Source: Octopus sinensis
Taxonomy: Eukaryota
Length of the DNA: 64,000 bases
NCBI RefSeq assembly: GCF_006345805.1
Contig: NC_043010.1
Span: 54,374,001-54,438,000, forward strand
Direction of reading: 5' to 3'
Below are positions 32,691 to 33,470 of the stretch, one piece after another. Under the pieces are notes generated by a model. That model was not told the DNA's origin, did not search any database, and worked only from the letters and a program-made list of their open reading frames with translations. Each line of letters starts with the position of its first letter. Position 1 is the stretch's first letter. The position numbers and the translations under genes are program-made.

Positions 32691-33470
32691 TTAATCAATA
32701 TAGGGTGGCAAAAAATTTTGTAGAATTTTTGCCACCAGCGGCCTAGTGGGAAAAAAATTAATAGTCATAGACCATTTTTAAGTTCAACATCACGATCAAG
32801 GAACGGCCATAATAGGCCATTCACCCACTAGAAATAACACCCAAAGCTTCAACCGCAAAATAACATTAATTCCGTAAACCAGGAGAAAATTAAAAAACAT
32901 TTACCCTGTAATTTCTTATACGATGCACCGTTTCATCTACTGTTTAATGGTAAACTAACCTGATTAAATCACATCCTTGATTGTGATGTTGAACTTAAAA
33001 ATGGTCTATGACTATTTAATTTTTTCCCACTAGGCCGCTGGTGGCAAAAAAATTCTACAAAATTTTTTGCCACCCTATATTGATTAATTATGAATTTTCT
33101 GGTTAATTCCGTAATGGAATCGGCGGCTTATATTTATTTGCTGCCGATAAATTTGGCGCGAGTGCGATGATTTGAAAATTTTAGGTCAGATATTGCCGAG
33201 GCAGGGACCGAAATGCCTCGTGAAAATATCTGTTCCGATCTGGCTATTTCTTACTGACGAATCTAAGGGCCTATGGAAGATGGCTTGATTTAATTTAATC
33301 AGGTTAGTTTACCATTAAACAGTAGATGAAACGGTGCATCGTATAAGAAATTACAGGGTAAATGTTTTTTAATTTTCTCCTGGTTACGGAATTATGTTAT
33401 TTTGCGGTTGAAGCTTTGGCTGTTATTTCTAGTGGGTGAATGGCCTATTATGGCCGTTCCTTGATTGTGA
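32691..33470 (+). mobile_element. young non-coding hammerhead element (retrozyme / Penelope pseudo-LTR-like), A-B-A'-C-B' architecture, in (TA)n
   Basis: A 32691-32802 is the reverse complement of A' 32974-33087; B 32790-32969 is the reverse complement of B' 33293-33470; tccttgattgtgat recurs at 32974 and 33458 (period 484). Confidence 0.8.
33246..33351 (+). ncRNA. canonical type I hammerhead ribozyme with a 57-nt stem II insertion
   Basis: Stem I ATTTCTTA/TAAGAAAT (8 bp); CTGACGA 33254-33260; stem II ATCTA/TAGAT; GAAA 33328-33331; stem III ACGG[TGCA]TCGT; GUA triplet with predicted cleavage after 33343. Confidence 0.85.

What the first reader, a model, noticed from the sequence alone, without database searches (positions are those of the whole stretch)
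33246..33351. Intact type I hammerhead ribozyme hidden by a 57-nt insertion in stem II
Seen in sequence: every conserved position is present. These are stem I ATTTCTTA/TAAGAAAT (8 perfect bp), CUGACGA, stem II ATCTA/TAGAT, GAAA, stem III ACGG-TGCA-TCGT and a GUA cleavage triplet (cut after 33343). Loop II is a 57-nt insert with its own small hairpins (tgatt/aatca; gttta/taaac), so searches that cap loop II length would miss it. Established knowledge: Penelope-like elements and non-LTR retrozymes of animals carry type I hammerheads, usually minimal ones. Inference: this is an active, monomer-competent hammerhead of an expanded architecture in a cephalopod element.
Basis: partly seen in the sequence, partly recalled or inferred. 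Interest (0 to 1): 0.88.

Follow-up and report, generated by a model that had tools for sequence, protein, structure and literature searches.

The report
Hammerhead ribozyme in small retroelement
The stretch really does carry every conserved part of a self-cutting "hammerhead" RNA, with an unusually long second arm. It sits in a small, probably dead copy of a Penelope-type mobile element, so it is a new example of a known kind, and whether it cuts is untested.

Summary
The motif is a type I hammerhead: 8-bp helix I, CUGACGA, 5-bp helix II closed by 57 nt, GAAA, a 4-bp helix III with a UGCA loop, and GUA with the cut after 33343.

It is not chance. About 1e-5 motifs of this quality are expected per window from 8000 shuffles. 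Of 540 scrambled-core decoys run on the real sequence, only the true core gives strong hits. It gives two, the second being a 59-nt hammerhead at 10761-10819.

The "insert" is a long imperfect extension of helix II, not an unstructured loop.

The motif lies in a 484-nt non-coding unit inserted in a (TA)n microsatellite, head-to-head with an inverted, 5'-truncated copy. That copy starts inside helix II and lacks the 5' half of the ribozyme. This is the published insertion signature of Penelope-like elements, which carry type I hammerheads.

Not supported or untestable:
- "Monomer-competent and active" is unproven. Helix III is a quasi-palindrome that favours dimers, 10.1-11.1 is A-U, and no loop-loop contacts are evident. 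In read-through transcripts the inverted copy masks the 3' half.
- The cephalopod origin could not be checked.
- No other genomic copy could be retrieved, so there is no covariation test.
- Rfam hammerhead models match neither motif.

The parts
33246..33253 (+). Helix I, 5' strand (AUUUCUUA)
   Evidence: Read. It pairs with 33344-33351 by 8 Watson-Crick pairs and is kept in the predicted minimum-energy fold.
33254..33260 (+). Catalytic core, 5' box CUGACGA (C3-A9, N7 = C)
   Evidence: descriptor hit.
33261..33265 (+). Helix II, 5' strand (AUCUA); position 10.1 is A
33266..33322 (+). The 57-nt "loop II". It is a long imperfect extension of helix II: AUGG/CCAU, 3 further pairs, then the 10-bp hairpin UGGCUUGAUU/AAUCAGGUUA with a 6-nt loop.
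   Evidence: Alone, 33261-33327 folds at -17.9 kcal/mol, z = -2.8. The same arm appears in the folds of the whole motif.
33323..33327 (+). Helix II, 3' strand (UAGAU); position 11.1 is U
33328..33331 (+). Catalytic core, 3' box GAAA (G12 A13 A14 A15.1)
33331..33342 (+). Helix III, ACGG-UGCA-UCGU: 4 pairs including one G.U, with a palindromic tetraloop. The 12-mer is a quasi-palindrome.
   Evidence: The hairpin alone is -0.2 kcal/mol; the self-duplex is -17.5 kcal/mol.
33343..33344 (+). Predicted cleavage site: A17 = 33343, with scission between 33343 and 33344 (triplet GUA)
   Evidence: Position follows from the hammerhead consensus applied. Cleavage was not tested.
33344..33351 (+). Helix I, 3' strand (UAAGAAAU)
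32975..33471 (+). Plus-strand copy of the element (497 nt). It is one 484-nt non-coding unit plus a 13-nt terminal redundancy (CCTTGATTGTGAT at 32975-87 and again at 33459-71). It carries the complete hammerhead.
32690..32975 (-). Inverted, 5'-truncated copy (286 nt). It starts at the equivalent of 33287, inside the helix II arm. It therefore has UAGAU-GAAA-helix III-GUA-helix I 3' strand (about 32939 down to 32911) but no CUGACGA. It is 95-97% identical to the plus copy.
32600..32689 (.). (TA)n microsatellite on the left of the insertion
33472..33625 (.). (TA)n / (TATG)n microsatellite on the right of the insertion
10761..10819 (+). Second type I hammerhead motif of the window: UAUCA / CUGACGA / AGGG-19 nt-CCCU / GAAA / AUCG-GUC-CGAU / A17 = 10814 / UGGUA
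   Evidence: 2.5e-4 such motifs are expected per window.
10527..10965 (.). Element holding the second hammerhead. The plus copy (about 10714-10965) lies head-to-head with an inverted 5'-truncated copy (10713 down to 10527). Arms 10617-10713 and 10863-10960 are 86% identical. Microsatellites lie on both sides.
8823..9085 (.). Third locus, same family as 10527-10965: two head-to-head copies, both truncated downstream of the hammerhead position, inside (TA)n

Best explanation
33246-33351 is a genuine type I hammerhead ribozyme motif. It belongs to a short (484-nt), non-coding, AT-rich retroelement of the Penelope-like-element / animal retrozyme kind.

In the element's RNA, helix I (8 bp) and a short palindromic helix III flank the conserved core. 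Helix II is drawn out into a 67-nt imperfect hairpin arm.

Inferred mechanism, none of it shown here:
1. Transcripts of source copies fold the core, either alone or as a double hammerhead made by two tandem units pairing through the palindromic helix III.
2. They cut between A33343 and U33344, releasing unit-length RNA, which may then be circularised.
3. A Penelope-type reverse transcriptase/GIY-YIG endonuclease supplied in trans nicks AT-rich DNA and copies the RNA from both DNA strands. This leaves head-to-head copies with truncated 5' ends inside (TA)n.

This particular locus is most likely a dead insertion. It has one complete ribozyme, no tandem partner, and an inverted half-copy that would mask the 3' half in read-through RNA.

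Shown here: the motif, its non-randomness, the repeat anatomy and the fold predictions. Inferred: catalysis, dimer mode, circular RNA and the mobilising enzyme.
For: Motif and statistics:
- The motif is complete.
- 1.0e-5 motifs of this quality are expected per window from 8000 shuffles.
- The true core is the only one of 540 scrambled cores to give strong hits on the real sequence, and it gives two.
- Allowing one core mismatch adds no further hits, and 40 shuffles gave none.

Features not required by the descriptor that match published metazoan and Penelope-type hammerheads (PMC4209133, PMC6765202):
- A palindromic loop 3, and helix III 12-mer and 11-mer that self-dimerise at -17.5 and -13.9 kcal/mol.
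- A helix II longer than usual.
- Low GC (37%).

Insertion anatomy:
- A plus copy of one unit plus 13 nt abuts an inverted 5'-truncated copy, and both run out into (TA)n.
- The same architecture is seen at 10527-10965, around the second hammerhead, and at 8823-9085.
- PMC8557442 describes the inverted 5'-truncated copy and the (TA)n bias as Penelope hallmarks.
- PMC11167929 shows that a Penelope-type protein cuts AT-rich DNA, extends both strands, and starts reverse transcription at alternative internal sites.
- In both families the hammerhead is on the sense strand, about 220-235 nt from the longer 3' end.

RNA structure: the unit RNA is more structured than shuffles (z = -4.4 as a circle).
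Against: - No Rfam hammerhead model matches either motif, even at E <= 10 on 77-123 nt.
- No second complete copy of this element could be obtained, so conservation and covariation of the helices are untested. nhmmer on the window found only the local copies. Scans of the metagenome, prokaryote-genome and viral collections were empty. The pseudo-ORF routes were empty.
- No reverse transcriptase or GIY-YIG remnant was found. Only the ten longest ORFs were tested.
- The locus is not a tandem array, which is the defining layout of retrozymes.
- Pair 10.1-11.1 is A-U, whereas G-C is highly conserved (PMC4209133, PMC3088659).
- The two local copies differ by only 3-5%. Intactness of the core at this locus therefore says nothing about selection.
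Confidence: 0.7

Rival explanations
1. Chance match. AT-rich, hairpin-rich DNA happens to spell the 11 core bases next to three fortuitous stems, and no ribozyme ancestry is involved.
For: The hammerhead core is short. With loop II free up to 120 nt, the expected number of motifs of this quality is about 0.3-0.5 per 2-3 Gb genome (extrapolated). No Rfam hit. No second complete copy was seen.
Against: The expectation per window is 1e-5. None of 539 scrambled cores gives a comparable motif on the real sequence. A second independent hammerhead lies in the same 64 kb, in the same kind of element and at a similar distance from its 3' end. The palindromic loop 3 was not demanded by the search.
Confidence: 0.06
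2. A real hammerhead descendant that is catalytically crippled. The drawn-out helix II, the A10.1-U11.1 pair and the absence of loop-loop contacts make it a relic or a protein-dependent motif. It would serve, if anything, as a structural or recognition element for the retroelement machinery rather than as a self-cutter.
For: - Metazoan Penelope-type hammerheads cut very poorly in vitro, even as dimers (PMC4209133).
- In the anole element, cleavage needed the element's protein and was dispensable for insertion in vitro (PMC11167929).
- The predicted minimum-energy fold competes with helix III.
- Helix III is marginal as a hairpin.
Against: All 11 invariant core positions, the A15.1-U16.1 pair and a non-G at position 17 are intact. 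Its 4-bp helix III is longer than in invertebrate retrozyme hammerheads that do cut as monomers (PMC7229834). Helix II length is not known to block minimal hammerheads (own knowledge).
Confidence: 0.2
3. The host element is a DNA-level foldback or MITE-type transposon, or a local palindromic duplication in an unstable microsatellite, and the hammerhead rides along by accident of ancestry.
For: The window is rich in inverted repeats and near-perfect palindromes (9280-10190). TA-rich targets are also typical of Tc1/mariner-derived MITEs (own knowledge). A mariner-like fragment lies at 58866-59117.
Against: The ends of the loci are not inverted repeats of each other. The repeated arms are internal on one side, and in 32690-33471 the parts are permuted (rcA-rcB | A-X-B). 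That fits two 5'-truncated copies of a tandem or circular unit, not terminal inverted repeats.
Confidence: 0.04

Closest known systems
Minimal type I hammerheads of Penelope-like elements (Cervera & de la Pena 2014, PMC4209133; Lunse et al. 2017)
   Same: Type I topology and the canonical CUGANGA / GAAA core. Helix II is longer than in canonical hammerheads. Helix III and loop 3 are palindromic, allowing a double hammerhead. The motif is on the sense strand near the element's 3' end. Single dispersed motifs and opposite-strand pairs 100-700 bp apart occur from truncated copies. The element is AT-rich and sits in a microsatellite with an inverted 5'-truncated partner (PMC8557442).
   Different: Helix III is a real 4-bp hairpin rather than 0-1 bp. 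Helix I is 8 bp rather than 4-5. There is no extra unpaired base between A9 and 10.1. Pair 10.1-11.1 is A-U rather than the conserved G-C. Helix II is a 67-nt arm rather than 7-8 bp. No RT/EN reading frame lies at the locus.
Animal non-LTR retrozymes (Cervera & de la Pena 2020, PMC7229834; Li et al. 2026 preprint, 10.64898/2026.07.22.740005)
   Same: A non-coding, low-GC unit of a few hundred nt carrying one type I hammerhead. Helix III is of the invertebrate kind (paired stem plus tetraloop). The unit RNA is strongly self-paired (z = -4.4). The plus copy is exactly one circularly permuted unit plus 13 nt, as expected from a tandem or circular template.
   Different: The locus is not a tandem array, which is the defining layout. 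The unit is 484 nt, slightly above the 150-450 nt reported. No recognisable loop 1-loop 2 contacts. No expression or circular-RNA data.
Naiad Penelope-like elements with 'HHR_half_core' (Craig et al. 2021, PMC8557442)
   Same: (TA)n target preference. The core halves CUGANGA and GAAA lie far apart (35-50 nt there, 67 nt here), so the motif escapes standard descriptors. Naiad remnants are reported in cephalopods.
   Different: Those cases were reported as not fitting any stem/loop descriptor. Here all three helices are present. No Naiad protein remnant was found at the locus, so membership could not be tested.
Discontinuous hammerhead of mammalian Clec2 3' UTRs (Martick et al. 2008)
   Same: A complete hammerhead core whose halves are separated by a long insertion in one helix, so it was missed by ordinary searches.
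   Different: There the interruption is hundreds of nt, in another helix, and in a host mRNA. Here it is a 57-nt structured extension of helix II in a mobile element.

Membership tests
Hammerhead ribozyme (type I) | Core C3 U4 G5 A6 N7 G8 A9 and G12 A13 A14 | tested here: met
   CUGACGA at 33254-60 and GAA at 33328-30.
Hammerhead ribozyme (type I) | A15.1-U16.1 pair and a non-G at position 17 | tested here: met
   A33331-U33342; A33343.
Hammerhead ribozyme (type I) | Three helices around the core, with helix I open and helices II and III closed | tested here: met
   8, 5 and 4 bp. The constrained hammerhead fold is -22.7 kcal/mol against a minimum-energy fold of -24.8.
Hammerhead ribozyme (type I) | Conserved G10.1-C11.1 pair | tested here: not met
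   A33261-U33327, and also A-U in the second motif. It is the most conserved pair after 15.1-16.1, but natural variants exist (PMC3088659).
Hammerhead ribozyme (type I) | Match to a curated covariance model (Rfam Hammerhead_1, _3, _II, HH9, HH10) | tested here: not met
   No hammerhead family at the gathering threshold or at E <= 10. The same holds for the 59-nt motif, so the models do not cover this kind of hammerhead.
Hammerhead ribozyme (type I) | Tertiary contacts between loop II and helix I | not testable with these tools
   Helix I is 8 uninterrupted pairs with no bulge, and the tip of the helix II arm is far from the core. No contact is evident by eye.
Hammerhead ribozyme (type I) | Conservation and covariation of the helices across copies | tested here: inconclusive
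   The only other copy is the local inverted half-copy, which is identical over 33290-33351. No external copies were retrievable. The second motif keeps all helices with different sequences, but it was found by a pairing descriptor.
Hammerhead ribozyme (type I) | Site-specific self-cleavage | not testable with these tools
   Needs a transcription and cleavage assay.
Penelope-like element (or its non-autonomous derivative) | RT plus GIY-YIG endonuclease reading frame | tested here: not met
   The 484-nt unit has no long ORF. The ten longest ORFs of the window have no such Pfam domain. The locus can therefore only be non-autonomous.
Penelope-like element (or its non-autonomous derivative) | Inverted 5'-truncated copy abutting the element, with partial tandem or terminal redundancy | tested here: met
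   32690-32975 (-) lies head-to-head with 32975-33471 (+), with a 13-nt redundancy. This is the feature described in PMC8557442.
Penelope-like element (or its non-autonomous derivative) | AT-rich or microsatellite target | tested here: met
   (TA)n on both sides of all three loci.
Penelope-like element (or its non-autonomous derivative) | Hammerhead on the sense strand in the terminal repeat region | tested here: met
   The orientation deduced from the 5' truncations equals the hammerhead strand at both loci.
Animal non-LTR retrozyme | Head-to-tail tandem repeats (two or more units) of 150-450 bp, each with a type I hammerhead | tested here: not met
   The locus holds one unit plus 13 nt, and the unit is 484 nt. 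TRF-type tandem structure is absent. Only inverted copies are present.
Animal non-LTR retrozyme | Non-coding, GC below 45%, highly self-paired RNA | tested here: met
   GC is 37%. The circular fold is -139.3 kcal/mol against -110.5 +/- 6.5 for shuffles, with 60% of bases paired.
Animal non-LTR retrozyme | Expressed as circular RNA | not testable with these tools
   No transcriptome data on hand.

The most novel reading that the evidence does not exclude
Hammerheads with a greatly extended helix II (core halves 60-70 nt apart) may be the regular ribozyme of a family of (TA)n-targeting Penelope-type elements and their non-autonomous derivatives. The candidates are Naiad-like elements, which are reported to lack canonical hammerheads but to carry widely spaced 'half cores'. 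Descriptor and covariance-model searches would then systematically under-count ribozymes in invertebrate genomes.
Probability: 0.12. Interest if true: 0.55.

Novelty: new member of a known kind. Interest (0 to 1): 0.36.

Why it matters
Type I hammerheads in Penelope-like elements and retrozymes are already known in the thousands in invertebrate genomes. One more is not surprising in itself.

Two points are worth keeping.

1. A complete hammerhead whose helix II is a 67-nt arm, and a second 59-nt one nearby, are both invisible to all Rfam hammerhead models. Censuses based on tight descriptors or these models therefore miss real motifs.

2. The locus shows on a small scale the full Penelope-type insertion signature around a non-coding unit: (TA)n target, head-to-head 5'-truncated copies, alternative 3' ends, and one permuted unit plus 13 nt. 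This could help link ribozyme-bearing non-autonomous elements to their autonomous partners in this genome.

Tried and rejected
- **Rfam.** Searched the whole window at the gathering threshold. Also ran E <= 10 scans of 601, 351, 123 and 77 nt around both motifs. No hammerhead family matched, only microsatellite-driven miRNA noise.
- **Pseudo-ORF route to other genomic copies.** A 60-aa open frame across the element found nothing. An exact look-up of ten window ORFs found none in the collection. The source genome is evidently not represented there.
- **DNA pattern scans.** Metagenome twice, prokaryote genomes and viral contigs: all empty.
- **nhmmer with the 474-nt and 406-nt elements against the window.** Only the local copies and the 8.9-kb relative matched.
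- **Pfam on the ten longest ORFs.** No RT/EN domain. A full six-frame scan was prepared but not run, as it was too large for the benefit.
- **Taxon check with the mariner-like fragment.** It hit only arthropod SETMAR-like proteins. This indicates an animal genome, but "cephalopod" remains unverified.
- **ARAGORN.** No tRNA-like sequence was found.
- **Supplementary PLE consensus sequences of PMC8557442** are not held. Lunse et al. 2017 is not held.
- **Rejected: a MITE with terminal inverted repeats.** The ends are not inverted repeats of each other.
- **Rejected: the 57 nt as a later insertion at this locus.** The inverted copy already carries the last 36 nt of them.
- **Correction.** My first unit assembly omitted 11 nt because of a coordinate slip. 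This was corrected.

Full report
**1. The observation**

- Helix I: ATTTCTTA (33246-53) pairs with TAAGAAAT (33344-51), 8 Watson-Crick pairs.
- 5' core: CTGACGA (33254-60).
- Helix II: ATCTA (33261-65) pairs with TAGAT (33323-27).
- Loop II: 57 nt between them (33266-33322).
- 3' core: GAAA (33328-31).
- Helix III: ACGG / TGCA / TCGT (33331-42). This is four pairs, one of them G.U.
- Cleavage triplet: GUA, with A17 = 33343.

This is the type I topology, with helix I open.

**2. Is it more than chance?**

I wrote a type I descriptor: CUGANGA, helix II >= 3 bp, loop II <= 120 nt, GAAA, an A15.1-U16.1-closed helix III >= 2 bp, non-G at position 17, helix I >= 3 bp, G.U allowed.

- On the window it returns two hits: this one, and a second at 10761-10819.
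- In 8000 block-wise dinucleotide shuffles the relaxed descriptor fires 0.052 times per window. At stems >= 5/4/4 it fires 2.5e-4 times, and at >= 6/5/4 never. Multiplying the marginals gives 1.0e-5 per window for stems >= 8/5/4.
- Shuffles destroy the real hairpin content of a repeat-rich genome. I therefore also scanned the real sequence with 540 same-composition permutations of the two core strings. Only the true hammerhead core gives any hit at >= 5/4/3, and it gives two. Its best summed stem length is 18, against at most 12 for any decoy.
- Allowing one core mismatch adds nothing.

The motif is therefore not a chance match at the scale of this window. At the scale of a 2-3 Gb genome, 1e-5 per 64 kb is 0.3-0.5 expected. 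The second motif and the context below are what make the case.

**3. The "57-nt insertion"**

Segment 33261-33327 folds on its own into one long imperfect hairpin (-17.9 kcal/mol, z = -2.8). From the base outwards it has:
- the 5-bp base AUCUA/UAGAU,
- an internal loop,
- AUGG/CCAU plus three more pairs,
- the 10-bp hairpin UGGCUUGAUU/AAUCAGGUUA with a 6-nt loop.

The same arm appears when the whole motif is folded. It is thus an extended helix II, not an unstructured loop or an obvious foreign insert.

The second hammerhead also has a two-part helix II (4 bp, 2x2 internal loop, 5 bp). Penelope-type hammerheads are described as having a larger than usual helix II (PMC4209133). The present arm is the long end of a known tendency.

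**4. Fold and likely activity**

- The predicted minimum-energy fold keeps helices I and II, but pairs ACGA of the core with UCGU instead of forming helix III. The constrained hammerhead fold is 2.1 kcal/mol weaker, -22.7 against -24.8.
- The helix III 12-mer ACGGUGCAUCGU is a quasi-palindrome. As a hairpin it is worth -0.2 kcal/mol; as a self-duplex, -17.5. The second motif's AUCGGUCCGAU gives 0.0 and -13.9.
- A short helix III capped by a small palindromic loop is the hallmark of metazoan type I and Penelope-type hammerheads. It is the basis of the double-hammerhead (dimer) mode in tandem transcripts (PMC4209133, PMC6765202).
- A 4-bp helix III is nevertheless longer than in invertebrate retrozyme hammerheads that cut well as monomers (PMC7229834). 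Monomer activity is possible but unproven.
- Both motifs have A10.1-U11.1 where G-C is strongly conserved (PMC4209133, PMC3088659). Neither shows an obvious loop-loop contact.
- No Rfam hammerhead model matches either motif, even at E <= 10 on 77-123 nt. The insertion is therefore not the only reason such motifs are missed.

**5. What the motif sits in**

BLAST of the neighbourhood against the window and direct reading give this layout:

(TA)n 32600-32689 | inverted copy 32690-32975 (-) | plus copy 32975-33471 (+) | (TA)n from 33472

- The plus copy is 497 nt. It is one 484-nt unit plus a 13-nt terminal redundancy: CCTTGATTGTGAT occurs at 32975-87 and again at 33459-71.
- The inverted copy is 286 nt and 95-97% identical. 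It begins at the equivalent of 33287, inside the helix II arm. It therefore carries UAGAU-GAAA-helix III-GUA-UAAGAAAU, but not helix I 5', CUGACGA or helix II 5'.
- The parts are permuted between the copies. With A = 32988-33088, X = 33089-33286 and B = 33287-33471, the locus reads rcA-rcB | A-X-B. This fits two windows onto a tandem or circular unit X-B-A with 5' truncation at different points. It does not fit terminal inverted repeats.
- The unit has no ORF and is 37% GC. As RNA it is more structured than shuffles (z = -4.4 as a circle, 60% paired).

The second hammerhead lies in an unrelated element at 10527-10965 with the same architecture. A plus copy carrying the motif lies head-to-head with an inverted 5'-truncated copy (arms 86% identical), and microsatellites lie on both sides.

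A third locus of that family (8823-9085) is two head-to-head copies, both truncated downstream of the hammerhead position, again in (TA)n.

In both families the inverted copy runs about 90-100 nt further at its 3' end than the plus copy. The cleavage site lies about 220-235 nt from that longer 3' end.

**6. Comparison with what is known**

- Craig et al. (PMC8557442) describe Penelope-like insertions as partial tandems with an inverted 5'-truncated copy adjacent upstream. They also report an optional tail at one end and a bias for microsatellites, (TA)n in Naiads. Canonical elements carry the hammerhead in the terminal repeat.
- Frangieh et al. (PMC11167929) show that a purified Penelope-type protein cuts AT-rich DNA and extends both strands. 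It starts reverse transcription at alternative internal sites, and its hammerhead needs the protein to cut.
- Cervera & de la Pena (PMC4209133) note single dispersed motifs from truncated elements, and opposite-strand pairs 100-700 bp apart.
- Animal non-LTR retrozymes are non-coding, low-GC, 150-450-bp tandem units with type I hammerheads (PMC7229834). A 2026 preprint (10.64898/2026.07.22.740005) argues that they derive from Penelope terminal repeats.

The locus matches the Penelope-type insertion signature and the retrozyme-type content. It is not a tandem array and has no RT/EN frame. I therefore file it as a non-autonomous Penelope-type (retrozyme-like) element, not as a proven member of either named class.

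**7. This locus in particular**

- Folding 32690-33480 as one RNA puts all of 33323-33351 into a duplex with 32911-32939 of the inverted copy. Only transcripts starting between about 32976 and 33245 could form the ribozyme.
- With one complete motif, no tandem partner, and 3-5% divergence between the two copies, the locus is best read as a fairly young, dead insertion.
- Its intact core reflects youth, not selection at this site.

**8. What could not be done**

- No other genomic copy of the element was obtainable. The protein-collection routes and four DNA pattern scans were empty.
- The cephalopod origin could not be checked. The only informative protein fragment is mariner-like and hits arthropod SETMAR-like proteins.
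- The held literature has no description of cephalopod hammerheads.

**9. Verdict**

This is a real type I hammerhead motif in a Penelope-type non-autonomous retroelement, with an unusually long helix II. "Active and monomer-competent" is unproven, and the dimer-prone helix III argues for caution.
- It is a new member of a known kind with an uncommon helix II.
- The most novel reading not excluded is that such long-helix-II hammerheads are the regular, overlooked ribozyme of (TA)n-targeting Penelope-type families such as Naiads. I put that at about 0.12.

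Noticed in passing
window 10761-10819 (+): A second complete type I hammerhead motif (UAUCA / CUGACGA / AGGG-19 nt-CCCU / GAAA / AUCG-GUC-CGAU / A / UGGUA). It shares N7 = C, A10.1-U11.1 and UA at positions 16.1/17 with the first. 2.5e-4 such motifs are expected per window. No Rfam model finds it.
   Followed up: yes
window 8823-9085 and 10527-10965: Two loci of one repeat family, each made of head-to-head 5'-truncated copies inside (TA)n. Only the 10.5-kb locus reaches far enough 5' to include the hammerhead.
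   Followed up: partly
window 33030-33066 (+), and its copy at about 32712-32746 (-): A perfect 12-bp hairpin GGTGGCAAAAAA...TTTTTTGCCACC close to the 3' end of the element, conserved in both copies. It may be a recognition or reverse-transcription start structure. The other family has a small T5-N-A5 hairpin near its 3' end.
   Followed up: no
window about 9280-10190: A near-perfect palindrome of about 900 bp (arms 97% complementary, nested 102-nt inner arms, 13-nt centre). It has no hammerhead core and looks like a foldback-type element.
   Followed up: partly
window 52040-52815; 48398-48609; 55823-56031; 34579-34771; 49630-50092; 2840-3327: Further inverted-repeat or palindromic structures (72-99% complementary), several of them next to microsatellites. 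Not examined for element type.
   Followed up: no
window 1594-1808, 2589-2823, 45507-45740, 60476-60709 and at least 20 further fragments: A SINE-like interspersed repeat of about 215-235 bp (69-87% identity between copies). ARAGORN finds no tRNA-like part in the window.
   Followed up: partly
window 58866-59117 (+): An open frame encoding a mariner/SETMAR-type HTH_48 DNA-binding domain fragment. It is 68% identical to a protein of the amphipod Trinorchestia longiramus and 54% to one of the ant Formica fusca. This is a transposase remnant.
   Followed up: partly
window 4660-5010, 8620-8822, 10960-11280, 21130-21375, 33472-33625, 55520-55780: Very long (TA)n and related microsatellites recur through the window. 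They produce spurious miRNA-family matches in Rfam E-value scans and long Y/I-rich ORFs.
   Followed up: no
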